DNA of 64,000 bases from Macrostomum lignano (GCA_002269645.1 NIVC01003293.1:1-64000); one strand, 5' to 3'; counted from the first letter of the stretch, positions 1,353 through 47,557 are shown. The notes: generated by a model not told the origin, from the letters alone. Numbers and translations: made by a program.

Positions 1353-1455
1353 TCAGCCCAGATTGGCGTCCTCTCCCTCCTCATCGCAGCCTTCCTCAGA
1401 ATTTGCCGAATTCGGTCCGTAGACTAATTCGCTGATGCTGGCGGATCGTCTGCAG
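1353..1455 (-). CDS. GPCR putative terminal exon (CRRSASISELVYGPNSANSEEGCDEEGEDANLG*)
   Basis: Reached through a 44-nt GC-AG intron (CG|gcaagt...ctacag|C). Gives a post-helix-8 Cys and an acidic tail; stop at 1353-1355. Confidence 0.45.
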
Positions 1456-4400
1456 CTGTAGCAGCAGCAGCAGCAGCAACAACAACAAGCCAGACTTGCC
1501 GCCGACGGATGCTGGCGTCAACCAGCAGGAAGAACAGTGGATAGGCCGCGCAAGTGGCGTAGGCTATCCACTTCATATCGGCGACGCTTCTTGCGGACGG
1601 GCCGAGTCCCTCCCGGCAGGCGGTGACGCTGTCGCAGAGGCAGTAGAGCAGAATGCCCAGACTGTGCGGCGACCAGAGCACCAGGCTGACCGCGAATGCG
1701 CACAGGTTTAATTGGCAGGCGGATTTCTCGCTGCGCAGCATCCGACGCCAGGAATTGTTGACCAGTTGACGTCTGCGACGCTTCTGCTTCTGATCAGATG
1801 CTTGGCTGTGGCGATGCTGCTGCTGATGCTGAATCTGAATTGCGTCGTCCTCGTCGTAGGAGAATGCCGATGCTGGAATCTCCATCGGAGTTTGAGCTTG
1901 TTGTTGATTTAGCAGAGCTTGACTATGCACTGGACAGGTTGTCATAGCAACTGGGAGGAGCTCCTTTGGGATTGGGAAACCTCTGGGACTCAGTGTCAAA
2001 CTGGCGCCGCTCTCGCCGCCATTGTTCTTCGCGGCTCCGCTAGACTTGAAAGTGTGACAGCTGCGACTCGACGGCACATTGCAGGCCGGGCCACCGCCGT
2101 GAGACTCCTCCGGCGCCTCGGGTATCGGGGTCATTCGGTACAGCTCGTAGGCGCTGGTCGCGTCCCGGCTTAGCGAGCTGCTGCTACCGCCGCCGTTTCC
2201 TCCACCGTAGGCCAGCAGCGTCTCCCTTGTGCAGTCTCTCGGTACCGAAGTGCTATGAATTGTTGCCGAGGACGAGGATGATGATGAAGGTAGTAGTGAG
2301 AGCGTAGGACGGCGCTGACCGAGAGTTTGCGCTCTCTGATGCTGATGACGGTAGCTGTCCGTTTCTGAAATGCAGGTGACATCAAGGACTCGACAGCTGC
2401 CGCCACCTCCGCCGCCAATGGATGACGCCGATTCCAGTTCGGACTGCTGCTTGTGATAGGACCTGCAATTGCAATTTTTGCGTATTACGATGTTCGGTCA
2501 TTCTCAGATATCTCTATCTCTGAAATTTATTTCGAAGAAGGCCTTTTTGGTATTCAAATATGTTTTCTGTTAGTTCTTTCGTAGTATCTAGAAGTCGAAT
2601 TCAATAAGCCGGACGGAGGATTACTTCTGGGAGGTTTACGAGCTAAAGAATTTTTTGCGTCTAAAAACCTTGCGTGTGTATTCTGAACTCAAAAGTCTTC
2701 TGTAGCATCTGGACACAGCCTTCTGTGTGAGCTCAGAAGTCTTCTGTAGCATCTGGACACAGCCTTCTGTGTGAGCTCAGTATTCTACACAAAAATTCTG
2801 CGCATTTCTTGCAGACTGTCAGACTCTGTCAAACTGAATTCAGCAACCTCCATGCACTGTACTCACCTGATGAGCTCGCTGACCAACTCGAGATCTTGCT
2901 GTCCCCTGACCGAAGCCAGCTGACAGAAACCCAGACACAGCATCAGCAGGCTGGCTAAACAGGGCACCCCGTACGACATGCAGGCTCGCAGGATGACAAA
3001 GTTCGGATCGCGGTGCAGGCAGACTCCCGCGGAGCTGTCAAACAAATTCTCGTGCCGTTTGCTGATGGCGAACTCGGCCGTAGTCTGGATGAAGCTGACG
3101 CTCCAAGGTGCGCCAAGTTTTAGGCAGGTCGAGCCGCGAGTCGTAGAGTAAGCGTAGCGAATTGGATACCGGAGCCTCAGCCAGGTGTCAATGGTGGAGC
3201 CGAGGCAGTGCAGGAACACCAGGTTGCACAGGAACGTGTCCATGTAGATCCAGGCGATGCACAGGGTGTTCATCAGACTGGCGTGGCCCCTGCCTGTGTA
3301 GGTATTTAATAACTTCATGGGTTTGATGGCGAGAGGACAACGCCAAGAAGTCTGCATAACTAAATTCCTAAATTATTTGAGAATAGGTACTGTTAATCTT
3401 CATTTTGACGCCGCAGGCACTCATTTTGGCTCTACAGGTACAAAAGACTGACAGGGCTGGATGTCAGAGAGTGACAAATTTTAGTGTCAGAGAGTGACAA
3501 ATTTTGGTGTCAGAGAGTGACAACTTTTGGTGTCAGAGAGTGACAACTTTGTGTCATAGAGTGACAAATTCTGGTGTCTAAGAGTGACAAATTCTGGTGT
3601 CATAGAGTGACAAATCTGGTGTCATAGAGTGACAAATTCTGGTGTCGAGTGACAAATTCTGGTGTCGAGTGACAAATTCTGGTGTCGAGTGACAAATTCT
3701 GGTGTCGAGTGACAAATTCTGGTGTCGAGTGACAAATTCTGGTGTCAGAGAGTGACAAATTTTAGTGTCAGAGATCGACAAATTTTGGTGTCAGAGAGTG
3801 ACAAATTCTGGTGTTAGAGATCGACAAATTTTGGTGTCAGAGATCGACAAATTTTGGTGTCAGAGAGTGACAAATTTTGGTGTCAGAGATCGACAAATTC
3901 TGGTGTCAGAGAGTGACAAATTTTGGTGTCAGAGAGTGACAAATTTTAGTGTCAGAGATCGACAAATTTTGGTGTCAGAGAGTGACAAATTTTGGTGTCA
4001 GAGATCGACAAATTTTGATGTCAGAGAGTGACAAATTTTGGTGTCAGAGATCGACAAATTTTGATGTCAGAGAGTGACAAATTGGTGTCAGAGATGACAA
4101 ATTGGTGTCAGAGAGTGACAAATTTTGGTGTCAGAGAGTGACAAATTTTGGTGTCAGAGATCGACAAATTTTGGTGTCAGAGAGTGACAAATTTTGGTGT
4201 CAGAGATCGACAAATTTTGGTGTCAGAGAGTGACAAATTTTGGTGTCAGAGATCGACAAATTTTGAGTGTGACATTTTAGTGTCAGAGATCGACAAATGG
4301 TGTCAGAGAGTGACAAACCTACTAGCTACTAAATCGCTCACATCAGATAGGAATTTACTGCATTCTCTCAATGGAGCCAGACCGGATAGATAAGTTAGAC

Positions 4401-7400
4401 CAGCTCTTAGCTAGATTAGTTAGTCAAATAAGCCCCGGCCTAGGAGTGTGAGACTGTCGGTTTATATCGATTTGAAATTGAAACATTAGCTTTGGGCACG
4501 GGATTGCAAAGTCAATCGTATAGAGTAGACTGCAGGGTGTAATTAGGGGCTTGGGGGATTATGATGGCCGGGAGAGATTCGGAATTCTCTTCCATCCACC
4601 CCCTTCCTCACGCAGGCCCCACACTCATTTAATTAGTTGGGGTCACGTGGCTCTTCGAGCTTAACAACTAACTGTTCTAACACCCACCGGTTCTGGGCAG
4701 AGTCAAAGCTATCGGATTCCGAATCGCTCAGGGATTTGGGATTGTAGAGGCAGGATCAGAGCCAGATGGTCCCGCGGTCGGTGTATCCTCATTCTCACTC
4801 CCGCTCCTCCGCTCATTCACCACCGCTCTGACATACCGCTGGGGTCCCTAGTGATTCATGAAAGCACGGCACAGCCACCCGACCACATTCATCGGGCTCA
4901 ATTTCCCCCTAGGGATTAAGACCCGGCCGCCCGCATCCCCTTTCTGCTTTAATCTCCGTCCAAGTCGCCTTTGCAGTCTCAATTTGCTCTGTTCTGCTCG
5001 GCAAATGCTGGAATTGCAGTGTACGCTGGAATGACTTGACATGAGACATACAACCTATGGCACACATTATTATATGTGTATGCTGTTTTATGAGATGCTA
5101 TAGGCACAGCTTTCTGCTGTCATATATATATTGTACTACAATAATATAACTTGTACGTCCAACATTGCTTATTAATTATAGGCTAGGCCAAGCAAGAACA
5201 GTGTGCTCCATCCATTGATTGGATTTTATTGATTTGATTTATTTTTTTAAGGACTTCATGATTTATTTACAGGTTTCATCTGGTCACTGGAGGTACAAAT
5301 AGGTCACTGGAGGTCACAATGAGTCACTGGATATCCCAATGAGTCACTGGATATCCCAATGAGTCACTGGATATCCCAATGAGTCACTGGACATCCCAAT
5401 GAGTCACTAGAGGTCACAATAGATTACAGAAGAGCCCATCAGATCGCTTGAAGTTTAAATGGTTAATATTCGGTTTCAATTATGTCTGGTTAATAAAGTT
5501 TCAAACTTTTAGACCCAAACCTGGATCCTTTCTGCCTGTCTCGCATCAAGAAATATACGCTGGATCATCAAGTCTTATAATTGGTCTGCCTTAAAAATCG
5601 AACATCAGAATAATTGCGCTCGAATAAAAAATTGCCGAAATTTTGGATTTCCTCTATTCACTTTTGGAAGAATTTGAAGAAGGTCTGGGAGTCTGGGGAG
5701 CAATAACTGCGAACTTGAAAAGAGAAAAAACATCGTCTTCCCCAAGTGCGAGGAGGTTCGGGCGGGGGATGCACCAGAATGAGATTGAATGCCTGGGAGG
5801 GATTTTTCAACCTTAATTCTCCCTTTACCCTCTGCCACCCCGTGCCTGTCGCTCCGAAGAAACCCCCAGCATCCAAGCCCCCAGGAGCACTTGACTGATC
5901 ATCGTCTGCTTTTGGGCAGATGAAGCTTGAAGCAAGCGAAGTCTTGCTTGGCTTGTCTCGTCCTAGCAGAGGGCGGAGCAGGCCGTGAGGGACGAGAGTG
6001 AAGAGTGAAGTGAAGGCACGAAACTCACCAGCCAGTTGGGCCGCCTAGGAGAGAACTTGAAGCTAAACGTGCAATCTGGAGAGTGGAAACTATGAGAGAG
6101 CAAGTTTTCAATTTCTATCTCTAGGGAGTTGTCTTGAAGATCGAACTCAAGGTTGTGTTACCAATTTATGATCCCTTTGCGTGCAGCTTTACATCATCCT
6201 AGCTATGTAGGGCCAGACGCTATAAACTAGTAGACGGTGCTGTAATTTGATAGTTCAGGCTGCTAAAAAAGCAGGTCCACAGCACAAGAAGAGATTCTGT
6301 AGAGAGGCCGCGGATGCTTCATTATTAAGGGCACTTGCTGACAGGAAACCGCGCGGGAGTATCGGGATTTATCTCTTGAGCATAGTTCGTGCTGTGTATC
6401 TATGCCGCGCTTCTATCTGAGTTCTCTCTGACATTGAGACAACTCTGAGCTTGATTCAGCTTATATTCCGCTGGGGTCGCAGACTCGTCACTTGGAAACT
6501 GGTTGGAAAATTTTTCTATGTCTTTTTTAGCACCGGGTGCTTTAGCACCGGGTGCTTTAGCACCGGGTGCTTTAGCACCGGTTGATTTGGCACCGGGGGA
6601 TTTAGCACCGGGGGATTTAGCACCGGTTGATTTAGCACCGGGGGCTTTAGCACCGGGAGTTTTAGCACCGGTTGATTTAATACCGGGGGCTTTAGCTCCG
6701 GTTGATTTAGCACCGGTTGATTTAGCACCGGGGGCTTTAGCACCGGTTGATTTACCACCGGGGGCTTTAGCACCGGGGGCTTCAGCACCGGTTCATTTAG
6801 CACCGGTTCATTTAGCACCGGTTCATTTAGCACCGGGGGCTTTAGCACCGGTTCATTTAGCACCGGGGGCTTTAGCACCGGTTCATTTAGCACCGGGGGC
6901 TTTAGCACCGGGAGTTTTAGCACCGGTTGATTTAATACCGGGGGCTTTAGCTCCGGTTGATTTAGCACCGGTTGATTTAGCACCGGGGGCTTTAGCACCG
7001 GTTGGTTTACCACCGGGGGCTTTAGCACCGGGGGCTTTAGCACTGGGGGCTTTAGCACCGGTTCATTTAGCACCGGGGGCTTTAGCATCGGTTCATTTAG
7101 CACCGGGGGCTTTAGCACCGGGAGTTTTAGCACCGGTTGATTTAATACCGGGGGCTTTAGCTCCGGTTGATTTAGCACCGGTTGATTTAGCACCGGGGGC
7201 TTTAGCACCGGTTGATTTAGCACCGGGGGCTTTAGCACCGGGGGCTTTAGCACCGGTTCATTTAGCACCGGGGGCTTTAGCACCGGTTCATTTAGCACCG
7301 GGGGCTTTAGCACCGGTTCATTTAGCACCGGGGGATTTAGCACCGGGGATTTAGCACCGGGGATTTAGCACCGGGGATTTAGCACCGGGGGATTTAGCAC

Positions 7401-10400
7401 CGGTTGATTTAGCACCGGTTCATTTAGCACCGGTTCATTTAGCACCGGTTGATTTGGCACCGGGGATTTAGCACCGGGGGATTTAGCACCGTTGATTTAG
7501 CACCGGGGGCTTTAGCACCGGGAGTTTTAGCACCGGTTGATTTAATACCGGGGCTTTAGCTCCGGTTGATTTAGCACCGGTTGATTTAGCACCGGGGGCT
7601 TTAGCACCGGTTGATTTACCACCGGGGGCTTTAGCACCGGGGGCTTCAGCACCGGTTCATTTAGCACCGGTTCATTTAGCACCGGGGGCTTTAGCACCGG
7701 TTCATTTAGCACCGGGGGCTTTAGCACCGGTTCATTTAGCACCGGGGGCTTTAGCACCGGTTCATTTAGCACTGGGGCTTTAGCACCGGGAGTTTTAGCA
7801 CCGGTTGATTTAATACCGGGGCTTTAGCTCCGGTTGATTTAGCACCGGTTGATTTAGCACCGGGGGCTTTAGCACCGGTTGGTTTACCACCGGGGGCTTT
7901 AGCACCGGGGGCTTTAGCACTGGGGGCTTTAGCACCGGTTCATTTAGCACCGGGGGCTTTAGCATCGGTTCATTTAGCACCGGGGGCTTTAGCACCGGGA
8001 GTTTTAGCACCGGTTGATTTAATACCGGGGGCTTTAGCTCCGGTTGATTTAGCACCGGTTGATTTAGCACCGGGGGCTTTAGCACCGGTTGATTTAGCAC
8101 CGGGGGCTTTAGCACCGGGGGCTTTAGCACCGGTTCATTTAGCACCGGGGGCTTTAGCACCGGGGATTTAGCACCGGGGGATTTAGCACCGGGGATTTAG
8201 CACCGGGGGATTTAGCACCGGTTGATTTAGCACCGGTTCATTTAGCACCGGTTCATTTAGCACCGGGGGATTTAGCACCGGGGATTCAGCACCGGGAGAT
8301 TCAGTACCGGGGGATTCAGCACCGGGGGATTCAGCACCGGGGGCTTCAGCACCGGGGGCTTTAGCGAGGAGAGTGACTGATTGCAGTTGAATCCGCCAAC
8401 TCCAGTGTAGAGGGGCAGAGAAGCCTCTCTGTCTTCGCTTCTTTCTTGAGGTCGTGTGACGCACAAAAAATTGCAAAACTCAACGAGGCGTGAAAAGGAG
8501 AGCCTCCATCCACCACCGGAAGCTGTGAGCTATCTAGCTAGCTATTAGATGAAGGCTCAAAATAAAAAATTCCTCGGGAATTGATCTTGCCCTGTCACTG
8601 CGCTCTGGCCTCGAGGCTTCAAATCTGCAGTGACCCCAGCTTCATCCTCGTTCCCAGCTTCTTTTTTTATTTTCCAGCTGCTCTTGTTCACCCCCTCTCC
8701 TAAAGTGAGATTCGTCATCCCTGCTGCTGGAGCAACAGAAGTTGGCGTGACTGATTGCCCAGACTGCTCAATGCTACTCAGCTATGCACGATCTGCCAAC
8801 CCAAGCAAGATCTTTTCAATTCTTTGCTGGTCTCGTCTCTTCTGGAAGCTTTCCAATGCACAGTCTATCATAAGAGTGACATTTTTTGTAGCAAAAATGG
8901 ACAGGAGAGTGACATCTTTGTAGTTTGGAAGGATTGAGGAGAGTGACACTTTTGTAGTTCAGTAGGATTTAGAAGAGTGACATTTTTATTTTTAGTATGA
9001 CTGAGGAGAGTGACACTTTTGTAGTTTCGTAGGATTAAGAAGAGTGAAATTTTTGTTATTTAGTAGGACTGAGGAGAGTGACATTTTAGTAGTTTAGTAG
9101 GATTTAGAAGATTGACATTCTTTAGTTTAGTAGGACTGAGGAGAGTGACATTTTTGTAGTTTAGTAGGATTTAAAAGAGTGACATTCTTTAGTTTAGTAG
9201 GACTGAGGAGAGTGACATTTTTATAGTTTGGAAGGATTAAGGAGAGTGACATTTTTGTAGTTTAGTAGGATTTAGAAGAGTGACATTTTTGTTGTTTAGT
9301 ATGACTGAGGAGAGTGGGATTTTTGTAGTTTGGAAGGATTTAGAAGAGTGACTTTTTTGTTATTTAGTAGGACTGAGGAGAGTGACATTTTAGTAGTTTA
9401 GTAGGATTTAGAAGATTGACATTCTTTAGTTTAGTAGGACTGAGGAGAGTGACATTTTTATAGTTTGGAAGGATTAAGGAGAGTGACATTTTTGTAGTTT
9501 AGTAGGATTTAGAAGAGTGACATTTTTGTTGTTTAGTATGACTGAGGAGAGTGGGATTTTTGTAGTTTGGAAGGATTTAGAAGAGTGACTTTTTTGTTCC
9601 TTAGTATGATTGAGGAGAGCGACATATTTTTAGTTTAGTAGGACTGAAGAGAGTGACATTTTTGTAGTTTGGAAGGATTGAGGAGAGTGACATTTCTGTA
9701 GTTTAGTAGGATTGAGGAGAGTGACATTTTTGTAGTTTGGAAGGATTGAGGAGAGTGACATTTCTGTAGTTTAGTAGGATTGAGGAGAGTGACATTTTTG
9801 TAGTTTAGTAGGATTGAGGAGAGTGACATTTTTGTAGTTTAGTAGAATTGAGGAGAGTGACATTTTTTAATTCGGAAGGACTGGAGAGTGAGTCTATAAG
9901 TCTCTCTATATAGGAGCTGACTGACACAGACCAGTCTGTTTCAATTTCCATTAGTGTACAAGTAAGTTATAATACTGATATCAAGTCTGTCAATTCTTTT
10001 AAGCTCCTCCAAAGTTCTTCAATAAAATCCAACTCAGATTAAGTTGATCTATCCCTGTAAGCCCCAAAGTAGCAATATAATTAATTGGTACAAAGCAAAC
10101 CATATAACTAATGAAAGTATTGATTTTTCGAGGCTCCAGGATCTCTCTCTCTCTCTCTCTCTCTCTCGGTCCGTCTGTCTGAACAAATCTAAATTCTCGG
10201 TTGACTGGCCATTCCAATTCCAAAATAATCTTGTTGTGATCCGTTCGGGCCCAGCTAGGGGAACTCAGGGGGGGGGGTTCGGAACTTCGATTTCTTTACT
10301 GCAACTTGTAGATGCTTCAACAAAATACGTTAGTTACGACATATAATAATGCATATGAATTTGATTCCCAATATAGACCAAATGAGCCAAGTTGCCACCG

Positions 10401-10468
10401 GTATGTAACAGTTTATATTTTGCCGGAAACTTCGCCACAAATGAGCTACCAGCCGCGATAATAAGGCT

Positions 10469-10503
<35 letters not shown>

Positions 10504-11766
10504 TCTCTAAATACCTTTTGGTGAAGCTACCAAGTGCGCTCAATAATGTTATAGTGTAGCACTCTGCCTCGCTACTACTATTAGTCTAATTTGCATGCCA
10601 TTGAGAATTGAACGCTGTAGTAGCGCGGGACTAACGACCCGAGTTCAGTGTGTAATCCTATCAGGCCTGTTATATTACATATTTGGGATGCTTACTTGGT
10701 CCGTTAGTAAAGAAAGTCCTCATATACTACATCTGAGAGACGACAAGTATGTGCATCGGATCTGGCGGCAACAAGCTCTAACAACTGGGTAAGTTTCGCC
10801 CTTACTTGCAGGATAAGCCGCTGAATGAAGCATCCTCTTGAGCAATCCAATCAATTTTAGTTGAGTTCTTCAAGCTCATGCTATTGGCGATGAATCATGC
10901 TTGTTGCCATGGTCGTGATTTTATTTTTGATCATAACACAGCTTTTAGTTTGAGGGGAATGCCAGTGTCATGAACGACGAATCAAGGACCCAAATCAGGG
11001 GCGCCGAATCATGAGCGCCAAGTCAGATGCGTCGAACCACGGGCGCCGAATCAAGGGCCGAATTAGGGGCGCCAAGTCGTGGGCGCCAAATCAGAGGCAC
11101 CGAAGCAGAGGCGCCAAATCAGGGGCGCCAAATTAGGCGCGCCAAATCAGAGGCGCCGAATCAAGGGCGCCAAATCAAGGGCGCTGAATCAAGGGCGCCG
11201 AATAAAGGGCGCCGAATCAAAGGCGCCGAATTCGGGGCGCCAAATCAGAGGCGCCAAATCAGAGGCGCCGAATTAGGGGCACAAAATCATGGGCGCCAGA
11301 TCAGGAGCGCCGAATCTTCGGCTCCGAATCATTGGCGCCGAATTCGGGGCGCCAGATCAATAAAATCAATCAATCAAGCCCAAATCAACTCAAATTATGC
11401 ATATAATGAGGGGCAAAATTAATAGCACCAACAAGACAATGTCTGAAAGTGGCTGTGAGAAAAAACTACAAGTTCAAAAGGCTGGTTGGAAACCACGCTC
11501 TCACCAATGACTTCTTGAAGAACTCCAGGCGGAAAGCAGAGCAGAGTCTGCAACAACATCGCCCAGCAAATCGAGCTGACATAATTATAAGTGACAGCTG
11601 ACAGACGCTTGTCTCTTTTCAGGCCTGACAACACTAAACTGTTCAATATGAGGGAGCACAGAACTACAACTGTACAGCCGATGAACTGTGGGGTCAGTGG
11701 CAGGAGCAGGTATTCGGAAATCCTGTAGCCTAGCAAGTTGTCTGTTGAGACTGTTGAGTTAGTCAT
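1353..11766 (-). CDS. Rhodopsin-class (class A) aminergic-like GPCR, whole gene; exons 11505-11766, 2867-3293, 1500-2462 and probably 1353-1455 (about 584 aa)
   Basis: Seven TM segments with class A landmarks: N1.50 (ILNSLV), P2.59, C3.25/W3.28/D3.32/C3.36 (CIAWIYMDTFLC), W4.50, ECL2 Cys, P5.50, E6.30, W6.48-x-P6.50, W7.40/Y7.43/P7.50. Long ICL3. GT-AG introns are phase-consistent (1 and 2). Confidence 0.9.
1500..2462 (-). CDS. GPCR exon 3 (long ICL3, TM6, TM7)
   Basis: Acceptor ttgcag|G at 2462; the frame stays open into the tracked ORF 1424-2134 (EKSACQL...VLWSPHS...KWIAYATCAAYPLFF). The 3' boundary is uncertain: putative GC donor at 1499, otherwise stop at 1424. Confidence 0.85.
2867..3293 (-). 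CDS. GPCR exon 2 (TM3-TM5)
   Basis: Acceptor tacacag|GC (phase 1); donor AG|gtgagt (phase 2); encodes CIAWIYMDTFLC...IDTWLRLRYP...APWSVS...VCLHRDP...YGVP. Confidence 0.9.
3460..4317. repeat. 20-23-bp minisatellite (GAGAGTGACAAATTTTGGTGTCA)n
   Basis: Tandem copies in GPCR intron 1. Confidence 0.97.
5283..5420. repeat. 20-bp minisatellite (GTCACTGGATATCCCAATGA)n
   Basis: About 7 copies. Confidence 0.9.
6528..8365. repeat. 15-bp minisatellite (TTAGCACCGGGGGCT)n with higher-order structure
   Basis: About 120 copies; source of the LAPGA and PPVLK ORFs. Confidence 0.98.
8870..9870. repeat. About 34-bp minisatellite (GAGGAGAGTGACATTTTTGTAGTTTAGTAGGATT)n
   Basis: About 30 diverged copies. Confidence 0.96.
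10985..11360. repeat. About 20-bp GC-rich minisatellite (GGCGCCAAATCAGAG-type)
   Basis: Degenerate tandem copies. Confidence 0.92.
11505..11766 (-). CDS. GPCR exon 1 (N-terminus, TM1, TM2)
   Basis: ATG at 11766 (MTNSTV, N-glycosylation sequon); TM1 CTVVVLCSLILNSLVL; TM2 YVSSICWAMLLQTLLCFPP; phase-1 donor G|gtgaga at 11504. Confidence 0.85.
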
Positions 11767-12159: not shown

Positions 12160-14835
12160 TCATCATTAAATCATTATTCAGAGCTTCGAAATCATTATTA
12201 TTCAACTCTTCGAAATCATTATTATTCACTCTTCGAAATCATTATTATTCACTCTTCGAAATCATTATTATTCAACTCTTCGAAATCACTATTATTCAAC
12301 TCTTCGAAATCATTATTATTCACTCTTCGAAATCATTATTATTCAACTCTTCGAAATCATTATTATTCACTCTTCGAAATCATTATTATTCACTCTTCGA
12401 AATCATTATTATTCACTCTTCGAAATCATTATTATTCACTCTTCGAAATAACTATTATTCACCATTTGAAATCATTATTATTCAACTCTTCGAAATCATT
12501 ATTATTCACTCTTCGAAATCATTATTATTCACTCTTCGAAATAACTATTATTCACTCTTCGAAATCATTATTATTCACTCTTCGAAATAACTATTATTCA
12601 CCATTTGAAATCATTATTATTCACTCTTCGAAATCATTATTATTCACTCTTCGAAATCACTATTATTCAACTCTTCGAAATCATTATTATTCACTCTTCG
12701 AAATCATTATTATTCACTCTTCGAAATAACTATTATTCACCATTTGAAATCATTATTATTCACTCTTCGAAATCATTATTATTCAACTCTTCGAAATCAC
12801 TATTATTCAACTCTTCGAAATCATTATTATTCAACTCTTCGAAATCACTATTATTCAACTCTTCGAAATCATTATTATTCACTCTTCGAAATCATTATTA
12901 TTCACTCTTCGAAATCATTATTATTCAACTCTTCGAAATCACTATTATTCAACTCTTCGAAATCATTATTATTCAACTCTTCGAAATCACTATTATTCAA
13001 CTCTTCGAAATCATTATTATTCACTCTTCGAAATCATTATTATTCAACTCTTCGAAATCATTATTATTCACTCTTCGAAATCACTATTATTCAACTCTTC
13101 GAAATCATTATTATTCACTCTTCGAAATCATTATTATTCAACTCTTCGAAATCATTATTATTCAACTCTTCGAAATCATTATTATTCAACTCTTCGAAAT
13201 CATTATTATTCACTCTTCGAAATAACTATTATTCACCATTTGAAATCATTATTATTCACTCTTCGAAATCATTATTATTCAACTCTTCGAAATCATTATT
13301 TATTCACTCTTCGAAATCATTATTATTCACTCTTCGAAATCATTATTATTCACTCTTCGAAATCATTATTATTCACTCTTCGAAATCATTATTATTCACT
13401 CTTCGAAATCATTATTATTCAACTCTTCGAAATCATTATTATTCACTCTTCGAAATAACTATTATTCACCATTTGAAATCATTATTATTCACTCTTCGAA
13501 ATCATTATTATTCACTCTTCGAAATCATTATTATTTAACTCTTCGAAATCATTATTATTCAACTCTTCGAAATCACTATTATTCAACTCTTCGAAATCAT
13601 TATTATTCACTCTTCGAAATAACTATTATTCACCATTTGAAATCATTATTATTCAACTCTTCGAAATCATTATTATTCACTCTTCGAAATCATTATTATT
13701 CACTCTTCGAAATCATTATTATTCAACTCTTCGAAATCATTATTATTCACTCTTCGAAATAACTATTATTCACCATTTGAAATCATTATTATTCACTCTT
13801 CGAAATCATTATTATTCACTCTTCGAAATCATTATTATTTAACTCTTCGAAATCATTATTATTCAACTCTTCGAAATCATTATTATTCAACTCTTCGAAA
13901 TCATTATTATTCACTCTTCGAAATAACTATTATTCACCATTTGAAATCATTATTATTCACTCTTCGAAATCATTATTATTCACTCTTCGAAATCACTATT
14001 ATTTAACTCTTCGAAATCATTATTATTCAACTCTTCGAAATCACTATTATTCAACTCTTCGAAATCATTATTATTCAACTCTTCGAAATCATTATTATTC
14101 ACTCTTCGAAATCATTATTATTCACTCTTCGAAATCATTATTATTCACTCTTCGAAATCACTATTATTCACCATTTGAAATCATTATTATTCAACTCTTC
14201 GAAATCATTATTATTCACTCTTCGAAATCACTATTATTCAACTCTTCGAAATCATTATTATTCACTCTTCGAAATCATTATTATTCACTCTTCGAAATCA
14301 CTATTATTCACTCTTCGAAATCATTATTATTCACTCTTCGAAATCATTATTATTCACTCTTCGAAATCACTATTATTCACCATTTGAAATCATTATTATT
14401 CACCATTTGAAATCATTATTATTCACCATTTGAAATCATTATTATTCACCATTTGAAATCATTATTATTCAACTCTTCGAAATCATTATTATTCAACTCT
14501 TCGAAATCACTATTATTCAACTCTTCGAAATCATTATTATTCACTCTTCGAAATCATTATTATTCACTCTTCGAAATCATTATTATTCAACTCTTCGAAA
14601 TCATTATTATTCAACTCTTCGAAATCATTATTATTCACTCTTCGAAATCATTATTATTCACTCTTCGAAATAATTATTATTTAACTCTTCGAAATCATTA
14701 TTCATAGCTTCGAAATCATTATTCATAGCTTCGAAATCATTATTCATAGCTTCGAAATCATTATTCATAGCTTCGAAATCATTATTCATAGCTTCGAAAT
14801 CATTATTCATAGCTTCGAAATCATTATTCAGAGCT
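12160..14835. repeat. 23/24-bp minisatellite (CACTCTTCGAAATCATTATTATT)n, 2.7 kb, ending in a 21-bp variant
   Basis: More than 110 copies. Confidence 0.98.
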
Positions 14836-20432: not shown

Positions 20433-23400
20433 CTCCCTCTCTCTCTCTCTCTCCTAATCTCTCTACCCATATCACTCGCTTTTTCTCTTTGTTTCACTGA
20501 AAATCATCTTATCATCAGATCAATTTCCTGTCTATTATAAACGATTGTGCTTTTCTCCAACACTCACGTCCTTCCAGCAACCCGCCCTTCGGTGCGGTGG
20601 ACTTGAACACGTCAATCAGAACTTTAGAAAACGTAACTGTGGCGCACGGAGGTGGAGTCTTCTTCTTCAAGGAAGTCTTATGCGGTTGAAGCTCCGAACT
20701 GTCCGTCTGATGGAGTTGGACGAACTCTGAAGATTCGCACTTGAAGGTCAGGCCGAGAGGCGAGGCGAAAAGGAAGGTTCGACCTTTGCTGACGAATGTT
20801 ATTACGGGATCGACGCCTAGAATTCGAAAGTAGGAAGAATATTTACGCCCGTATAATTAGAATTGATTACACCTGCCTAATAGGGAGATGTGCAACCGAA
20901 AGCTGTTCAGTCCAAAAACTGGGGGTCGCCACACACACACCCTTAATTACCCCAGCTAATGCTGGCACAAAATTGTTCCTAGTGGGCCGAGTATCGAACC
21001 AACGACCTTTCAGTCGTGAGTCGATGCTCTAACCATGCACTAGGTTGCAGCCCCGTTTCTAAAGAGAGAAGAAAATCATTTTAGTTAATTGGCTGAATAC
21101 TCATCATCAAAACCTCCACGATTCTTCAGCTGGAGCCGCTACCCACCCCACCCCCACGATCCTTCAACTGCAGCGGGCTACCCACCCCCACGGCCCCACC
21201 CCCAACCCCCATGATCCTTCAACTGGAGCGGGCTACACAGCCCCAACCCCCCTGATCCTTCAACTGTAGCGGGCTACCCACCCCACGGCCCTACCCCCAA
21301 CCCCCATGATCCTTCAACTGGAGCGGGCTACCCAGCCCCAACCCCATGATCCTTCAACTGGAGCGGGCTACCCAGCCCCAACCCCCATGATCCTTCAACT
21401 GGAGCGGGCTACCCAGCCCCAACCCCCATGATTCTTCAACTGAGCGGGCTACCCACCCCACGGCACCACCCCAACCCCATGATCCTTCAACTGGAGCGGG
21501 CTACCCAGCCCCAACCCCCATGATCCTTCAACTGGAGCGGGCTACCCAGCCCCAACCCCCATGATCCTTCAACTGGAGCGGGCTACCCAGCCCCAACCCC
21601 CATGATCCTTCAACTGGAGCGGGCTACCCAGCCCCAACCCACATTATTCTTCAACTGGAGCGGGCTACCCAGCCCCAACCCACATTATTCTTCAACTGGA
21701 GCGGGCTTACCCACCCCCAAACCCCCATGATCCTTCAACTGGAGCGGGCTACCCAGCCCCAACCCCCACGACTCTTCAACTGGAGCGGGCTACCCAGCCC
21801 CAACCCACATTATTCTTCAACTGGAGCGGGCTACCCAGCCCCAACCCACATTATTCTTCAACTGGAGCGGGCTACCCAGCCCCAACCCACATTATTCTTC
21901 AACTGGAGCGGGCTTACCCACCCCAAACCCCCATGATCCTTCAACTGGAGCGGGCTACCCAGCCCCAACCCCCACGACTCTTCAACTGGAGCGGGCTACC
22001 CAGCCCCAACCCCCACGACTCTTCAACTGGAGCGGGCTACCCAGCCCCAACCCCCACGACTCTTCAACTGGAGCGGGCTACCCAGCCCCAACCCCCACGA
22101 CTCTTCAACTGCCCACCCCAACCCCAACAATTTTTCAGCTGGAGCGACGCTACTCATGCCCAAATGATAAGTAATAAAAAAATTAATTGCAACTCCCCAC
22201 CTGGCCCAATGCTGGCGTTCGCAAAGACAGGATCTCCCAAATCGACAATCAGCGTCAGTCGGTTGATGAAATTGTAGGCAGCAATAGACTGAAATTAGGA
22301 TTTTTTGGATAATTACTGTTGTATAAAGCTTTCTCCAATTAGCGCATGAACAGTATTTAAACTATTTACTTACAGTCATAATTTGCGGACTGTAAAAGTT
22401 CTGAAGTGAAAATAGCAGACAAGTAGATTTATTTTATATCGTTATGCTCTTAGAAAATCGCAAGAAGATGAAAAAGTATCTGCCTATTAAAAACTGAAGC
22501 CAAATTTAATACATCCTCAATATCCTTTCTACACCACCTGTGTCTATTATCAATAGTACACCACCCGAACCCATTAGTACACCAGTTAGAACACCACCCG
22601 AACCCATTAGTACACCATTTAGAACACCACCTGAACCCATTAGTACACCATTTAGAACACCACCCGAACCCATTAGTACACCATTTAGAACACCACCCGA
22701 ACCCATTAGTACACCATTTAGAACACCACCCGAACCCATTAGTACACCATTTAGAACACCACCCGAACTTATTAGTACACCATTTAGAACACCACCCGAA
22801 CCCCAGTGAGCGCAAACTGTCGCAGCTATCAGGTGCACCTCCTGTCTGAAGTCAAATCTCAGCCGGAATCTTCCAGAATTCCAGGTCAGCAGCACCCAAG
22901 CGGTTTCATTTCCGCAGCGACCGCTAATCTTAGTTGTTTCATTGGCAGTCGGACTTCTCAGTTCCGGCATGGTAACAGTTGCTAGGCAGTCGGAGGTGAA
23001 GTTAGCGCACCTGTAGCGCACATTGACGCTCAGAGATAGATCGGCGCTTACGCATTCTGTGCCATTTCGAGCTGACAGACTGAAGTAACACTCGGCATTG
23101 CTGCAGCTGATGCTGGTTGCTGTGGAGGCAAAAGTTATTAATAAATAGCTTATTAAAATAGTTAGTATCTGTGGATAATCATGATCATAGATATGACAGT
23201 TGCAATTCACAGCCATTGTGGGCCAACCCCCAAGGCACAGAGACATGCCTGACCGATTAGAAAGTCAGGACCTCTGTACACCCTGTGTGAGCGTCTGTAT
23301 GAGTTGCTTGCCTGCGTACAGCATTGGCGCGCTTGTGTGTGCTCAGTTTTCAAGGGCATCTTGTCAATCTTGTCAAACTTACCGCTAATCAATGAAATTG

Positions 23401-25669: not shown

Positions 25670-25710
<41 letters not shown>

Positions 25711-25747
25711 CAGTTGTTCAGTTAGTTAGTTAGTTAGTTAGTTAGTC

Positions 25748-25826
<79 letters not shown>

Positions 25827-26207
25827 CAGTTAGTTAGTCAGTTAGTTAGTCAGTTAGTTAGTTAGTCAGTTAGTTAGTTAGTAGATAGCGAGAAAGAGCG
25901 AGCGAAGCGAGCTCTTTCGAGCTTGCTTCCCGCAGCCAATCAAGCTGAAAGCACGCACACAAGATCACCGGAAACGATTAAGGCAGCTGGAAAGCCAATG
26001 GGCGCGGTAAGCGCTTTTATCCAGAGGAACTACCTGCTGGAACCAGCCATGCCGAACGAAAATCAGACTACTCAAGTAGTGCAAAAGAGTGCGAGCAACT
26101 ACCGAGAAATCTAATTTTCGTAACCGCTCCGGTGCAGGTCCAGGCAAAGTCAGTTAGTTAGTCAGTTAGTTAGTTAGTCAGTTAGTTAGTTAGTCAGTTA
26201 GTTAGTC

Positions 26208-26242
<35 letters not shown>

Positions 26243-26259
26243 CAGTTAGTTAGTTAGTC

Positions 26260-26339
<80 letters not shown>

Positions 26340-26368
26340 GGTTAGTTAGTTAGTCAGTTAGTTAGTTG

Positions 26369-26414
<46 letters not shown>

Positions 26415-26431
26415 CAGTTAGTTAGTTAGTC

Positions 26432-26519
<88 letters not shown>

Positions 26520-26548
26520 GGTTAGTTAGTTAGTCAGTTAGTTAGTTG

Positions 26549-26582
<34 letters not shown>

Positions 26583-26583
26583 C

Positions 26584-26657
<74 letters not shown>

Positions 26658-26747
26658 AGAGTTAGTTAGTTAGTTAGTCAGTTAGTCAGTTAGTTAGTTA
26701 GTCAGTTAGTTAGTTAGTCAGTTAGTTAGTTAGTTAGTTAGTTAGTC

Positions 26748-26778
<31 letters not shown>

Positions 26779-26795
26779 CAGTTAGTTAGTTAGTC

Positions 26796-26831
<36 letters not shown>

Positions 26832-26832
26832 G

Positions 26833-26877
<45 letters not shown>

Positions 26878-26878
26878 C

Positions 26879-26926
<48 letters not shown>

Positions 26927-26971
26927 CAGTTAGTTAGTCAGTTAGTTAGTCAGTTAGTTAGTTAGTTAGTC

Positions 26972-27010
<39 letters not shown>

Positions 27011-27011
27011 C

Positions 27012-27049
<38 letters not shown>

Positions 27050-30888: not shown

Positions 30889-30921
30889 CCACTGGAAGGT
30901 GGGTGATTGATAGATGTTCTA

Positions 30922-31410
<489 letters not shown>

Positions 31411-31449
31411 CTATCAATAAACTGTTACTGCCAGGACTGAAATGCTTAC

Positions 31450-31997
31450 CAGACCATCAGGAACCCCGCCAGCGATCTGCCTGTCGTCTCCATATCGGTC
31501 ACCCGATGATGCGCGCAGCGGCAGACTCAGATCTATTCTATCTTCGTCCGCAAACTCATCGCCGTACCAGTCGGCGGTGTCCTTGAACCCGTCGTAGGCT
31601 CTCAACAACTTCAGAAATCGTTTTTTAATCCATTGCAGCACGTGCGGACCAGAAATTTCTAGTAGGCCGGTAGATAAATTTAAACAAATGGTGACGTCAT
31701 CGACACGGATTAGCAGCCGATCGGCGCCCGTCTCGCTATCCCGGCCGCGGTGATAGTGCACTCTGTCTGTGGGATAATTATCTTTATGCTGCAGTACCTT
31801 GATCCAGAACATGGCCAAAGCTACTGAGCCATTGGCTTCCAAGGATTTGATGGCCACCCAGTTAGTTTGCAGGTCGACTCGAACTCCTAAGCCAGTTTTC
31901 TCGCCAACAAATCGTTTCACATAGTCATCCAGGTACTGGAAGCTCAACTTCTGAGGGCTTCTGGCTCTGGTGTAATGACTCATCTCTTTTGATGTAG
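31450..31997 (-). CDS. Unidentified protein, exon A
   Basis: Non-repetitive 189-aa ORF (ATG at 31983) with acceptor atatttcag at 31998 and donor CTG|gtaagc at 31449; globular-looking sequence (TICLNLSTGLLEISGPHVLQWIKKRFLKLL). Confidence 0.7.
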
Positions 31998-34069: not shown

Positions 34070-34760
34070 ACCCCACTGGCATAGATAATTCAACTGGGTG
34101 GACACCCCACTGGCATAGATAATTCAACTGGGTGGACACCTCACTGGCATAGATATTCAACTGGGTGGACACCCCACTGGCATAGATAATTCAACTGGGT
34201 GGACACCCCACTGGCATAGATATTCAACTGGGTGGACACCCCACTGGCATAGATAATTCAACTGGGTGGACACCTCACTGGCATAGATATTCAACTGGGT
34301 GGACACCCCACTGGCATAGATAATTCAACTGGGTGGACACCCACTGGCATAGATAATTCAACTGGGTGGACACCCCACTGGCATAGATAATTCAACTGGG
34401 TGGACACCCACTGGCATAGATAATTCAACTGGGTGGACACCCACTGGCATAGATAATTCAACTGGGTGGACACCTCACTGGCATAGATAATTCAACTGGG
34501 TGGACACCTCACTGGCATAGATAATTCAACTGGGTGGACACCTCACTGGCATAGATAATTCAACTGGGTGGACACCCCACTGGCATAGATAATTCAACTG
34601 GGTGGACACCCCACTGGCATAGATAATTCAACTGGGTGGACACCCCACTGGCATAGATAATTCAACTGGGTGGACACCCCACTGGCATAGATAATTCAAC
34701 TGGGTGGACACCCCACTGGCATAGATAATTCAACTGGGTGGACACCCCACTGGCATAGAT
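34070..34760. repeat. 34-bp minisatellite (CCACTGGCATAGATAATTCAACTGGGTGGACACC)n
   Basis: About 20 highly similar copies downstream of the spectrin stop. Confidence 0.97.
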
Positions 34761-34887
34761 ACCTCACCTGGGTCGAACCCCATAATTTAAAAAATTGCAC
34801 TTTTACAGTTAACTAAAACAAAATATGTAAAAGCGATAGAAAAGCCAAACAGCTGTTGTCAGTTAATTATTTACTCGTAAAAATCCG

Positions 34888-47432: not shown

Positions 47433-47497
<65 letters not shown>

Positions 47498-47498
47498 G

Positions 47499-47557
<59 letters not shown>

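What the first reader, a model, noticed from the sequence alone, without database searches (positions are those of the whole stretch)
1353..11766. Aminergic-type GPCR with an intact amine pocket but all activation microswitches lost (candidate decoy, scavenger or non-G-protein amine receptor)
Seen, by aligning the spliced protein to class A numbering: the orthosteric amine-binding set is present (C3.25, W3.28, D3.32, C3.36, W6.48, W7.40, Y7.43, ECL2 Cys). The signalling machinery is replaced throughout: D2.50->M, S3.39->V (Na+ site), DRY->DTW (R3.50->T), Y5.58->L, F6.44->S (PIF), NPxxY->YPLFF (N7.49->Y, Y7.53->F). The reading frame is intact and the roughly 330-aa ICL3 is Ser/Thr-rich. Established: D3.32 with W7.40/Y7.43 is the hallmark of biogenic-amine receptors; R3.50, Y5.58, Y7.53 and D2.50 are needed for canonical G-protein activation; DRY alteration characterises atypical (scavenger) chemokine receptors. 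Inference: random decay would not spare the ligand pocket while removing six switch positions, so this may be an amine-binding receptor that scavenges ligand, signals through arrestin, or acts as a heterodimer modulator.
Basis: partly seen in the sequence, partly recalled or inferred. Interest (0 to 1): 0.75.

Follow-up and report, generated by a model that had tools for sequence, protein, structure and literature searches.

The report
Switch-less serotonin-type receptor family member
This flatworm gene encodes an intact relative of serotonin-type receptors, from an old and conserved family that replaced the usual G-protein "on-switch" residues with its own conserved set, so it is a working but unconventional receptor rather than a decaying one.

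Summary
A three-exon gene on the minus strand (CDS 11766-11505, 3293-2867, 2462-1424; 575 aa) encodes a class A receptor. It has C3.25, W3.28, D3.32, C3.36, W6.48, W7.40 and Y7.43. It has M2.50, V3.39, D-T-W for DRY, L5.58, S6.44 and YPLFF for NPxxY.

These are not private losses. An exhaustive protein search found a family with the same pattern in Macrostomum, planarians (GCR085), flukes, a tapeworm, a nemertean and annelids. The family is monophyletic (NJ bootstrap 200/200), and its best-scoring solved relatives are 5-HT2A/2C. Two non-flatworm members give dN/dS of 0.03 in the TM core.

The family carries its own conserved residues:
- R3.53, in all members.
- E6.30, in 68 of 68.
- K/R7.39 paired with D/E3.32 and Y7.43; all three change together in the planarian clade.
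- R5.42, in flatworms.
- A CPxHG island in ICL3, which reads CPVHS here.

So the "amine pocket" has been remodelled with two cationic side chains, and F6.51/F6.52 are H/S. Binding of a plain monoamine is doubtful.

Most likely this is a functional receptor with a non-canonical mechanism and an unknown ligand. The decoy and arrestin roles are untested. Members were already catalogued as "Rho-x" or "Amine-1", but I found no paper describing the family.

The parts
11505..11766 (-). Coding exon 1. Encodes the N-terminus (with an NST glycosylation sequon), TM1 (N1.50, codon 11643-11641), ICL1 and TM2 (M2.50, codon 11559-11557; 'CFPPG'). Ends at donor G|GTGAGA, phase 1.
   Evidence: N-termini of family members map here by tblastn. 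P0102, a related N-terminal exon product, is 43% identical.
3294..11504 (-). Intron 1, about 8.2 kb. Mostly minisatellite arrays: a 23-bp unit at 3462-4270, a 15-bp unit x123 at 6526-8365, a 34-bp unit at 8903-9867, and a 14/42-bp unit at 10978-11353.
   Evidence: No further exon similar to family proteins was found in it.
2867..3293 (-). Coding exon 2. Encodes ECL1, TM3, TM4, ECL2, TM5 and the start of ICL3. TM3 carries C3.25, W3.28, D3.32 (3240-3238), C3.36-N3.37, V3.39, D-T-W (3189-3181) and R3.53 (3177-3175). TM4 carries P4.49-W4.50 and Q4.56. ECL2 carries the Cys and D-x-N5.37-F. TM5 carries R5.42 (2988-2986), S5.46, P5.50 and L5.58. A less likely alternative acceptor lies at 3359.
   Evidence: The acceptor at 3293 is supported by the 19-22 aa spacing from the TM2 proline to C3.25 in homologues. 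It is also supported by an intron of the same phase splitting a Gly codon (G|GC) in L001/L002.
2463..2866 (-). Intron 2, 404 nt (GTGAGT...TTGCAG), lying inside ICL3.
1424..2462 (-). Coding exon 3. Encodes the rest of ICL3 (Ser/Gly/Gln-rich, with the CPVHS island at 1936-1922), TM6, ECL3, TM7, helix 8, an Ala/Val-rich tail and the stop codon TAG (1426-1424). TM6 carries E6.30 (1729-1727), S6.44 and W-S-P-H-S (1675-1661). ECL3 has a Cys pair. TM7 carries K7.39-W7.40 (1573-1568), Y7.43 and YPLFF (1543-1529).

Best explanation
Identity. The locus is an intact, selected gene for a member of an old spiralian family of class A receptors. The family derives from the biogenic-amine stock, and 5-HT2 receptors are its best-scoring canonical relatives. 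The whole family has given up the canonical activation network: D2.50 and the Na+ site, PIF, R3.50, in most members Y5.58, and NPxxY. It keeps a different conserved set instead.

Proposed working (inferred, not shown):
1. In the pocket, D3.32 is held by the family-specific K7.39 together with Y7.43, forming an internal salt-bridge triad. R5.42 adds a second cationic group. The site therefore no longer suits a plain cationic monoamine. It would better fit a zwitterionic or acidic amine-derived small molecule, or it may hold no ligand at all.
2. On the cytoplasmic side, the D3.49-R3.50 pair and the R3.50-E6.30 lock are replaced by R3.53. R3.53 sits one helical turn lower, at i+4 from D3.49, and could pair with the invariant E6.30. 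The polar and water core is replaced by hydrophobic residues (M2.50, V3.39, Y7.49, F7.53, L5.58).
3. Coupling is therefore unlikely to use the classical R3.50/Y5.58/Y7.53 route to G proteins. Output probably goes through the long Ser-rich ICL3 and its conserved CPxH(G/S) island, by phosphorylation, arrestin or another docking partner.

What is shown: gene integrity, family membership, the conservation and covariation pattern, purifying selection in the family, and a confident 7TM aminergic fold. What is inferred: the salt bridges, the ligand class and the transducer.
For: Gene integrity and fold:
- The spliced ORF is intact and splice sites are canonical.
- With ICL3 removed, Pfam 7tm_1 scores 48.4 bits against a cut-off of 30.5.
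- The AlphaFold2 model has pLDDT 90.6 and pTM 0.88. The best Foldseek matches are 5-HT2A and alpha1A receptors.

Family:
- An exhaustive phmmer search gave 171 hits. About 45 representatives share the switch-less pattern. All the others are canonical, mostly 5-HT2-type, with DRY, NPxxY and D2.50.
- Named members come from Macrostomum lignano, Schmidtea (GCR085), Fasciola, Paragonimus, Clonorchis, Schistosoma, Schistocephalus, Tubulanus, Capitella and Owenia.
- Family monophyly has NJ bootstrap 200/200.
- The family profile against PDB sequences scores 164 bits for 5-HT2A, 154 for 5-HT2C, 117 for 5-HT2B and 108 for D2.

Family-specific conserved residues:
- R/K3.53 is present in all family sequences, against 2 of 98 canonical ones.
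- E6.30 is present in 68 of 68.
- K/R7.39 occurs in 36 of 38 family sequences, against 1 of 69 canonical ones.
- L3.41, P4.49, Q4.56 and N5.37 are each conserved in 96% or more.

Covariation: the only two members with N3.32 (planarian GCR085 and P0005) have E or H at 7.39 and F at 7.43.

Selection and other support:
- dN/dS is 0.033 in the TM core and 0.20 in ICL3 between two members, at dS of about 0.45.
- The ICL3 island CPxHG is present in 22 of the 24 flatworm members listed, and reads CPVHS here.
- The phase-1 intron before TM3 is conserved.
- The planarian member is transcribed (PMC4862687 S3 Data).
Against: - There is no transcript, ligand or signalling evidence for this gene or for any family member.
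- dN/dS could not be measured for this gene itself, because no DNA of the Macrostomum relative P0001 is on record.
- The 3.32-7.39 and 3.53-6.30 contacts are inferred from positions and covariation, not from coordinates.
- Covariation rests on a single clade, so it is one evolutionary event.
- A conserved R3.53 with E6.30 could equally mean that G-protein coupling is retained.
- NJ did not resolve the sister group: family plus 5-HT2 scored 13/200, and family plus a catecholamine/5-HT1-like set scored 57/200.
- Annelid-type members have G5.42, several of them keep Y5.58, and many keep Y7.53. The nemertean keeps NPFIY and Y5.58. The degree of 'switch loss' therefore varies within the family.
Confidence: 0.5

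Rival explanations
1. The protein still binds a classical monoamine through D3.32/W7.40/Y7.43 but cannot activate G proteins. It acts as a scavenger or decoy, or as an arrestin-only receptor, by analogy with atypical chemokine receptors.
For: D3.32, W6.48, W7.40, Y7.43 and S5.46 are present. R3.50, Y5.58, Y7.53 and D2.50 are absent. The long Ser-rich ICL3 could be phosphorylated. The family is under purifying selection.
Against: K7.39 and R5.42 place two positive charges next to the site that binds the amine. F6.51 and F6.52, which are aromatic ligand contacts in 97% of the canonical relatives, are H and S here. In some clades 3.32 is E or N. The cytoplasmic face carries newly conserved residues (R3.53, E6.30), which a pure sink would not obviously need. 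Nothing ties the family to ligand clearance.
Confidence: 0.2
2. It is still a G-protein-coupled receptor. The arginine has simply moved one turn down (R3.53) and takes over the roles of R3.50. The family then signals conventionally in response to an unidentified ligand.
For: R/K3.53 is invariant in the family and almost absent from canonical relatives (2 of 98). D3.49 is kept at i-4 from it. E6.30 is invariant. Some members keep Y5.58, Y7.53 or NPxxY.
Against: In this gene, D2.50, S3.39, I3.40, F6.44, Y5.58, N7.49 and Y7.53 are all replaced as well. The whole relay from pocket to G-protein site is therefore missing, not only R3.50. I know of no precedent for 3.53 substituting for 3.50.
Confidence: 0.25
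3. It is a ligand-independent accessory subunit. Its self-satisfied pocket (D3.32-K7.39) makes it a constitutive partner or chaperone that modulates canonical amine receptors or other membrane proteins.
For: The internal charge triad and its covariation. Hydrophobic filling of the core. A conserved ICL3 docking-like island.
Against: The extracellular disulfides, W6.48, the aromatic residue at 6.51 in most members, and N5.37/D(ECL2) are strongly conserved. That conservation is easier to explain if something binds in the pocket.
Confidence: 0.15
4. It is a pseudogene or a gene-model artefact.
For: No transcript evidence for this locus. Pfam 7tm_1 falls below its cut-off for the unedited 597-aa model (28.9 against 30.5 bits). 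The first intron is 8.2 kb and full of repeats.
Against: 1,725 coding nt lie open across three exons with canonical splice sites. All family-invariant residues are kept. It is 74% identical to a Macrostomum lignano protein. An intron position is shared with distant members. The AF2 model is confident. 7tm_1 scores 48.4 bits once ICL3 is removed.
Confidence: 0.03

Closest known systems
5-HT2 receptors (vertebrate 5-HT2A/2B/2C and invertebrate 5-HT2-type)
   Same: They are the best-scoring relatives, both for the single protein (E 1e-16) and for the family profile (164 and 154 bits against 108 for D2). They share the aminergic 7TM fold, the C3.25-ECL2 disulfide, an ECL3 Cys pair, 'C-x3-D-x-N-F' before TM5, D3.32, C3.36, W6.48, W7.40 and Y7.43.
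   Different: This gene has no D2.50, S3.39, I3.40, R3.50, Y5.58, F6.44, F6.51/F6.52, N7.49 or Y7.53. It has gained R3.53, P4.49, Q4.56, R5.42 and K7.39. A sister-group relation to 5-HT2 was not resolved by NJ.
Catalogued but undescribed family members: Schmidtea GCR085 ('Rho-x', PMC4862687; mk4.012231.01.01 in PMC3261222), Fasciola hepatica BN1106_s1278B000107 / D915_002765 ('Amine-1', 'Oct'; PMC6114109), Tubulanus 'alpha-2Db adrenergic receptor-like' XP_074655310.1, Capitella CAPTEDRAFT_212628
   Same: They belong to the same monophyletic family and carry the same signature. The Fasciola supplement even lists its motifs as MSVAT / DTY / SIALWAP / YLIGY.
   Different: Identity to the query is only 28-34% outside Macrostomum. 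The planarian clade has N3.32 with E/H7.39 and F7.43. One trematode clade has E3.32. None of these papers discusses the group or its motif pattern.
Atypical chemokine receptors and C5aR2 (decoy or arrestin-biased class A receptors with an altered DRY). Comparison from established knowledge; not tested here.
   Same: They are natural class A receptors with an altered DRY region that are conserved and functional without classical G-protein signalling. This is a possible functional analogy.
   Different: They belong to a different branch of class A and have peptide or protein ligands. Most still keep much of the remaining switch network. No homology beyond the superfamily, and no scavenging evidence here.
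Schistosome SmGPR clade of amine receptors (PMC3289605)
   Same: A flatworm-lineage, divergent, amine-type receptor clade with an unusual pocket.
   Different: The pattern is the inverse. SmGPRs keep DRY, FxxCWxxFF and NPxxY, and most have N3.32. They respond to histamine or dopamine in functional assays.
Flatworm-specific orphan rhodopsins (PROF1/Srfb, fwRhods, Rho-L)
   Same: They are divergent rhodopsin-like orphans listed in the same flatworm repertoires.
   Different: Those groups are defined by lacking non-flatworm homologues. This family has annelid and nemertean members and clear aminergic similarity. The Fasciola member was placed in 'Amine-1', not among the fwRhods.

Membership tests
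Class A (rhodopsin-like) GPCR | Seven-helix fold and a match to the 7tm_1 profile | tested here: met
   AF2 gives pLDDT 90.6 with 7 TM helices plus helix 8. Foldseek against PDB returns aminergic receptors at probability 1.00. 7tm_1 scores 48.4 bits against a cut-off of 30.5 for the ICL3-deleted protein. The unedited 597-aa model scored only 28.9 bits.
Class A (rhodopsin-like) GPCR | Reference residues N1.50, D2.50, R3.50, W4.50, P5.50, P6.50, P7.50 | tested here: not met
   N1.50, W4.50, P5.50, P6.50 and P7.50 are present. D2.50 is M and R3.50 is T. The fold is met but the canonical switch set is not.
Class A (rhodopsin-like) GPCR | TM3-ECL2 disulfide (C3.25-C45.50) | tested here: met
   Both cysteines are present and invariant in the family.
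Biogenic-amine receptors | D3.32 together with W7.40 and Y7.43 | tested here: met
   aa 106, 528 and 531 of the 575-aa model. 36 of 38 family sequences have D/E3.32 with Y7.43.
Biogenic-amine receptors | Aromatic cluster F6.44-x3-W6.48-x-P-F6.51-F6.52 | tested here: not met
   The query reads S-LVL-W-S-P-H-S. F6.44, F6.51 and F6.52 are 97-100% conserved in the canonical relatives.
Biogenic-amine receptors | Activation by a monoamine | not testable with these tools
   Needs a binding or signalling assay. The conserved K7.39 and R5.42 argue against a plain cationic ligand (inference).
5-HT2 subfamily | Closest sequence or profile similarity is to 5-HT2 receptors | tested here: met
5-HT2 subfamily | Phylogenetic placement inside or sister to 5-HT2 | tested here: inconclusive
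   NJ support for family plus 5-HT2 was 13/200. For family plus another amine group it was 57/200. An ML tree with broad sampling is needed.
5-HT2 subfamily | 5-HT contact residues (V3.33, T3.37, G5.42/S5.43, F6.51/F6.52) and Gq coupling through DRY/NPxxY | tested here: not met
   The query has T3.33, N3.37, R5.42/A5.43 and H6.51/S6.52, and has no R3.50, Y5.58 or Y7.53.
Switch-less spiralian amine-like family (defined here) | D3.49-x-[YFW]-L-R3.53; P4.49-W4.50; Q4.56; D-x-N5.37-F; E6.30; W6.48-x-P; [KR]7.39-W7.40-x-x-Y7.43; no D2.50, R3.50 or F6.44 | tested here: met
   The query carries every element and falls inside the clade with 200/200 support.
Atypical / decoy receptors (ACKR-like in function) | Ligand binding and internalisation without G-protein signalling | not testable with these tools
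   Only the altered DRY region is shared. No homology to the chemokine-receptor branch.
PROF1 / fwRhod flatworm-specific orphans | No homologues outside Platyhelminthes | tested here: not met
   Nemertean and annelid members exist. The Fasciola member is listed as Amine-1.

The most novel reading that the evidence does not exclude
The family may be a 'self-liganded' offshoot of amine receptors. In this reading, the lysine at 7.39 occupies the D3.32 amine site as an internal counter-ion, an opsin-like arrangement built on an aminergic scaffold. The receptor would then sense a zwitterionic or acidic amine precursor or metabolite, for example an aromatic amino acid, 5-HTP, L-DOPA or a kynurenine-type compound. 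The ligand's carboxylate would displace the K7.39/R5.42 pair. Signalling would be independent of G proteins, through the conserved CPxHG island of ICL3. This would amount to a new activation logic for class A receptors, conserved across Spiralia.
Probability: 0.15. Interest if true: 0.85.

Novelty: new variant of a known kind. Interest (0 to 1): 0.6.

Why it matters
R3.50, D2.50 and NPxxY are the most conserved functional residues of class A receptors. Natural families that dispense with all of them yet stay under strong selection are rare and informative. They show either an alternative way to couple a 7TM pocket to the cell, or a non-signalling use of the fold.

This family is found in free-living and parasitic flatworms (Fasciola, Schistosoma, Clonorchis, Paragonimus, tapeworms), annelids and a nemertean. 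Existing GPCR inventories list its members as ordinary "amine" or "unclustered" receptors.

Recognising the signature (R3.53/E6.30, the D3.32-K7.39-Y7.43 triad, R5.42, CPxHG) gives concrete mutants and assays. It also warns against predicting serotonin, octopamine or dopamine pharmacology for these genes in anthelmintic target lists. Macrostomum and planarians are tractable for in situ hybridisation and RNAi.

Tried and rejected
- The word-indexed homologue search with the full 597-aa protein returned nothing, probably because low-complexity ICL3 words swamped the candidates. With exon 2 alone it returned only the Macrostomum fragment P0001. With the family alignment it returned 14 hits. The exhaustive representative search did the real work.
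P0001 is not on record with DNA. I therefore could not compute dN/dS for this gene, and measured it on two other family members instead.
- I first built a 597-aa model using the most upstream acceptor (3359). It gives a 44-aa stretch from the TM2 proline to C3.25, against 19-22 aa in all relatives. I rejected it in favour of the acceptor at 3293. In the 597-aa model, part of the extra segment had aligned to the end of 5-HT2A TM2. I take that to be a chance extension.
I repeated it with full-length ids.
- The first two tree scripts failed, one on a missing id and one on the time limit. A faster NJ run gave family monophyly but no resolved sister group.
- Membership in PROF1/fwRhod/Rho-L and in the SmGPR clade was considered and rejected.
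- Literature searches for a description of the family or of amine-like receptors lacking DRY/NPxxY in flatworms or spiralians found only repertoire tables. The library is limited to open-access papers, so a description elsewhere cannot be excluded.
- The S. mansoni orthologue's identifier could not be recovered from the Zamanian 2011 supplements.

Full report
**1. What is in the window**

The finding lies on the minus strand. ORF listing and direct reading of the sequence give three coding exons with canonical GT-AG boundaries:
- Exon 1 runs 11766..11505, with the ATG at 11766 and donor G|GTGAGA in phase 1.
- Exon 2 ends at 2867 (CAG|GTGAGT).
- Exon 3 runs 2462..1424, with acceptor ttgcag|G and stop TAG at 1426-1424.

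Two phase-1 acceptors are possible for exon 2, at 3359 (tttag|TT) and at 3293 (tacacag|GC). I first used 3359, which gives 597 aa.

Homologues have 19-22 residues between the TM2 proline and C3.25. The 3293 acceptor gives 21 ('PPGVLQEVIGRGHASLMNTLC'), whereas 3359 gives 44. Two genomic contigs that carry distant family members also have an intron at the same place. That intron is in the same phase and splits the same Gly codon (G|GC), 9-11 residues before C3.25.

I therefore prefer CDS 11766..11505 + 3293..2867 + 2462..1424. This is 1,728 nt including the stop, or 575 aa. None of the residues under discussion depends on this choice.

Intron 1 (about 8.2 kb) is almost entirely minisatellite arrays and contains no further exon similar to family proteins.

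**2. Check of the observation**

HMMER alignments to human 5-HT2C/2A and a 29-sequence family alignment fix the Ballesteros-Weinstein numbering without gaps in the helices.
- Pocket set: C3.25, W3.28, D3.32, C3.36, the ECL2 Cys, W6.48, W7.40 and Y7.43.
- Switch positions: M2.50, V3.39, D-T-W at 3.49-3.51, L5.58, S6.44 and Y-P-L-F-F at 7.49-7.53.

Corrections:
- ICL3 is about 258 aa, not about 330. S+T is 21.7% there against 15.6% elsewhere.
- The pocket list was selective. The query also has T3.33, N3.37, F3.40, R5.42, A5.43, H6.51, S6.52 and K7.39.

The unedited 597-aa protein scores just below the Pfam 7tm_1 cut-off (28.9 against 30.5 bits). The revised protein with ICL3 removed scores 48.4 bits.

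AlphaFold2 on that construct, with a 45-sequence alignment, gives pLDDT 90.6 and pTM 0.88, with seven helices plus helix 8. Foldseek against the PDB returns 5-HT2A, alpha1A, D2/D3 and beta1 receptors.

**3. The pattern belongs to a family, not to this gene**

The exhaustive phmmer search of 1.84 billion representatives gave 171 hits. I tabulated 37 BW positions in the best 150, and they split cleanly into two sets.

About 45 representatives lack R3.50, having T/A/S/V/E/C/G/I instead; only P0021 has E-R-F. They also lack D2.50, F6.44 and N7.49; only the nemertean has NPFIY. They keep C3.25, D/E3.32, C3.36, D3.49, W4.50, the ECL2 Cys, P5.50, E6.30, W6.48, P6.50, W7.40 and Y7.43.

All the remaining hits are canonical, overwhelmingly 5-HT2-type, with DRY, D2.50, FxxxWxPFF and NPxxY.

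Named members of the switch-less set:
- Macrostomum lignano A0A1I8GR39 (P0001), 74% identical to the query over 113 aa.
- Schmidtea mediterranea GCR085.
- Fasciola hepatica D915_002765 (also BN1106_s1278B000107) and F. gigantica.
- Paragonimus heterotremus and Clonorchis sinensis.
- Several Schistosoma species.
- The tapeworm Schistocephalus solidus.
- The nemertean Tubulanus polymorphus, auto-named 'alpha-2Db adrenergic receptor-like'.
- The annelids Capitella teleta and Owenia fusiformis.

The closest relative suggests the window comes from a macrostomid flatworm, either a paralogue or a sister species of M. lignano. This is not proven.

A neighbour-joining tree on 207 conserved columns supports monophyly of the family in 200 of 200 bootstraps. 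The flatworm members group in 158 of 200 and an annelid-type clade in 194 of 200.

The sister group is not resolved by this crude method. Family plus 5-HT2 scored 13/200, and family plus a catecholamine/5-HT1-like set scored 57/200.

By profile score, however, 5-HT2A (164 bits) and 5-HT2C (154) stand well above 5-HT2B (117), D2 (108), 5-HT1A (100) and the rest.

**4. The family is under selection and has its own conserved residues**

I retrieved DNA for two non-flatworm members (Logan contigs L001 and L002, 89% identical in protein). Nei-Gojobori analysis gave:
- dN/dS = 0.033 over 194 codons of TM3-5 plus TM6-H8 (dS 0.42).
- dN/dS = 0.20 over 195 codons of ICL3 (dS 0.53).

This measures constraint in the family, not in the query gene.

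Comparing column conservation between 24 family and 32 canonical sequences, and across all sequences held, gives a family signature that is absent from canonical relatives:
- L3.41 in 100%.
- L3.52.
- R3.53: R or K in every family sequence, against 2 of 98 canonical ones.
- P4.49 in 96%.
- Q4.56 in 96%.
- D-x-N5.37-F, with N5.37 invariant.
- E6.30 in 68 of 68.
- K/R7.39: 36 of 38 family sequences, against 1 of 69 canonical ones.

R5.42 is present in flatworm and nemertean members, and G5.42 in the annelid type (36 R against 45 G, counting near-identical cluster members).

The only two family sequences with N3.32 are planarian GCR085 and P0005. They have E or H at 7.39 and F at 7.43, so all three positions change together. 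A trematode clade with E3.32 keeps K7.39 and Y7.43.

In ICL3, which is otherwise unalignable, 22 of the 24 flatworm members listed carry a CPxHG island. The query has CPVHS at aa 406-410.

**5.

The proposed test gives the predicted result: relatives keep D3.32/W7.40/Y7.43, lack DRY/NPxxY, and have dN/dS below 1. Three points change the picture.

1. The replacement is ancient and family-wide. It predates at least the split of flatworms, nemerteans and annelids.
2. The cytoplasmic face is not simply stripped. An invariant arginine appears one helical turn below the usual one (R3.53). It is at i+4 from the retained D3.49 and within reach of the invariant E6.30. I read this as a relocated D-R/E lock, which is inference.
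3. The pocket is not an intact amine pocket. A lysine or arginine at 7.39 faces 3.32 and co-varies with it and with Y7.43. R5.42 adds a second positive charge. In this gene the two TM6 phenylalanines that contact amine ligands are H and S.

A cationic monoamine would meet two cationic side chains and a carboxylate that is probably already paired. From general knowledge, basic residues at 7.39 are typical of receptors for carboxylate or phosphate ligands. That makes a zwitterionic or acidic amine-derived ligand, or no ligand, at least as plausible as 5-HT or dopamine.

**6. Most likely mechanism and rivals**

I commit to the following, at about 0.5. This is a functional receptor-like protein of a conserved switch-less family, and:
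- D3.32 is held in an internal triad with K7.39 and Y7.43.
- The hydrophobic core (M2.50, V3.39, Y7.49, F7.53, L5.58) cannot run the canonical Na+/water-mediated relay.
- Output, if any, goes through a non-canonical cytoplasmic surface (R3.53/E6.30, the Ser-rich ICL3 and the CPxH(G/S) island) rather than classical G-protein activation.

Rivals:
- Retained G-protein coupling through the shifted arginine, 0.25.
- A ligand-independent accessory subunit, 0.15.
- A pseudogene or artefact, 0.03.

Only assays can separate these. The mutants and readouts are listed under next steps.

**7. Relation to what is known**

Members of the family already sit in published inventories:
- Planarian GCR085 was left unclustered ('Rho-x', best human hit a dopamine receptor, E 9e-20). 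It is a single exon and transcribed, with a maximum RPKM of 1193. The Asex/Sex column of one earlier RNA-seq dataset gives it a fold-change of -5.76, which I read as enrichment in the sexual strain (PMC4862687 S3 Data).
- It also appears in a list of transcripts up-regulated in BaCl2-adapted planarian heads (PMC6881696), and as mk4.012231.01.01 in PMC3261222.
- The Fasciola member is listed as 'Amine-1 / Oct', with its motifs recorded as MSVAT / DTY / SIALWAP / YLIGY in a supplementary table. It is not discussed in the text (PMC6114109).

Recent surveys of flatworm 5-HT receptors recognise only 5-HT1- and 5-HT7-type receptors carrying DRY (PMC13020818, PMC5823469).

The family is not PROF1, fwRhod or Rho-L, because it has non-flatworm members. 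It shows the inverse pattern of the schistosome SmGPR clade, which keeps DRY/NPxxY and mostly has N3.32 (PMC3289605).

Atypical chemokine receptors and C5aR2 are a functional analogy only.

I found no paper that describes this family or its signature. The searchable library is limited to open-access papers, so this absence is not proof.

**8. Verdict**

I rate the finding as a new variant of a known kind, namely a conserved, switch-less offshoot of amine-type class A receptors that has been catalogued but not characterised. Interest is 0.6: it is unusual enough to interest GPCR specialists and flatworm pharmacologists, and it is directly testable, but nothing functional is yet known.

Noticed in passing
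window 36070-56106, minus strand: A large beta-spectrin-type gene lies upstream of the receptor gene on the same strand (at higher window coordinates). A calponin-homology domain exon sits at 54730-55122, and many spectrin-repeat exons follow (for example 36070-37476, 38268-39143, 45994-46629, 49886-50407). Its introns are filled with minisatellites.
   Followed up: partly
whole window, e.g. 1-660, 12184-14828, 21195-22111, 34069-34782, 43082-44112, 50446-51487, 60290-62655: Minisatellite density is extraordinary. TRF reports 49 rows scoring 200 or more, with units of 14-45 bp and up to about 150 copies, in nearly every intron and intergenic stretch. These arrays create long spurious ORFs in all frames.
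   Followed up: partly
window 25670-27049, 30921-31413, 47426-47937, 48189-49150: Long tetranucleotide arrays occur at four sites. Three read as the same motif family on one strand or the other: (TTAG)n/(AGTT)n and (ACTA)n. The fourth is (TCAA)n.
   Followed up: no
window 1451-1495, minus strand: The receptor's C-terminal tail 'VWLVVVAAAAAATAA' is encoded by a GTT/GCT trinucleotide run. The query lacks the post-helix-8 cysteine that 79% of family members have.
   Followed up: no
window 1922-1936 (aa 406-410); family proteins P0003-P0045: A short conserved island, CPxHG (CPVHS in the query), sits in the middle of the otherwise unalignable ICL3 of flatworm members. Non-flatworm members instead share 'SCTLLLR'. 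Neither island has a known function.
   Followed up: partly
L001 about 120-135 and L002 about 80-95, compared with window 3293: A phase-1 intron splitting a Gly codon (G|GC) just before TM3 is shared between the query and two distant non-flatworm family members. Planarian GCR085 is reported as single-exon.
   Followed up: partly
P0009 (Schmidtea GCR085) and P0005: The planarian clade of the family changed D3.32 to N, K7.39 to E/H and Y7.43 to F together, while keeping R5.42. This is the main evidence that the three positions interact.
   Followed up: yes
window 31414-31983 and 22506-23246, minus strand: Two ATG-initiated ORFs of 189 and 246 aa have no Pfam match. The second runs into a 33-bp repeat array. 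It is unknown whether either is a real exon or gene.
   Followed up: partly
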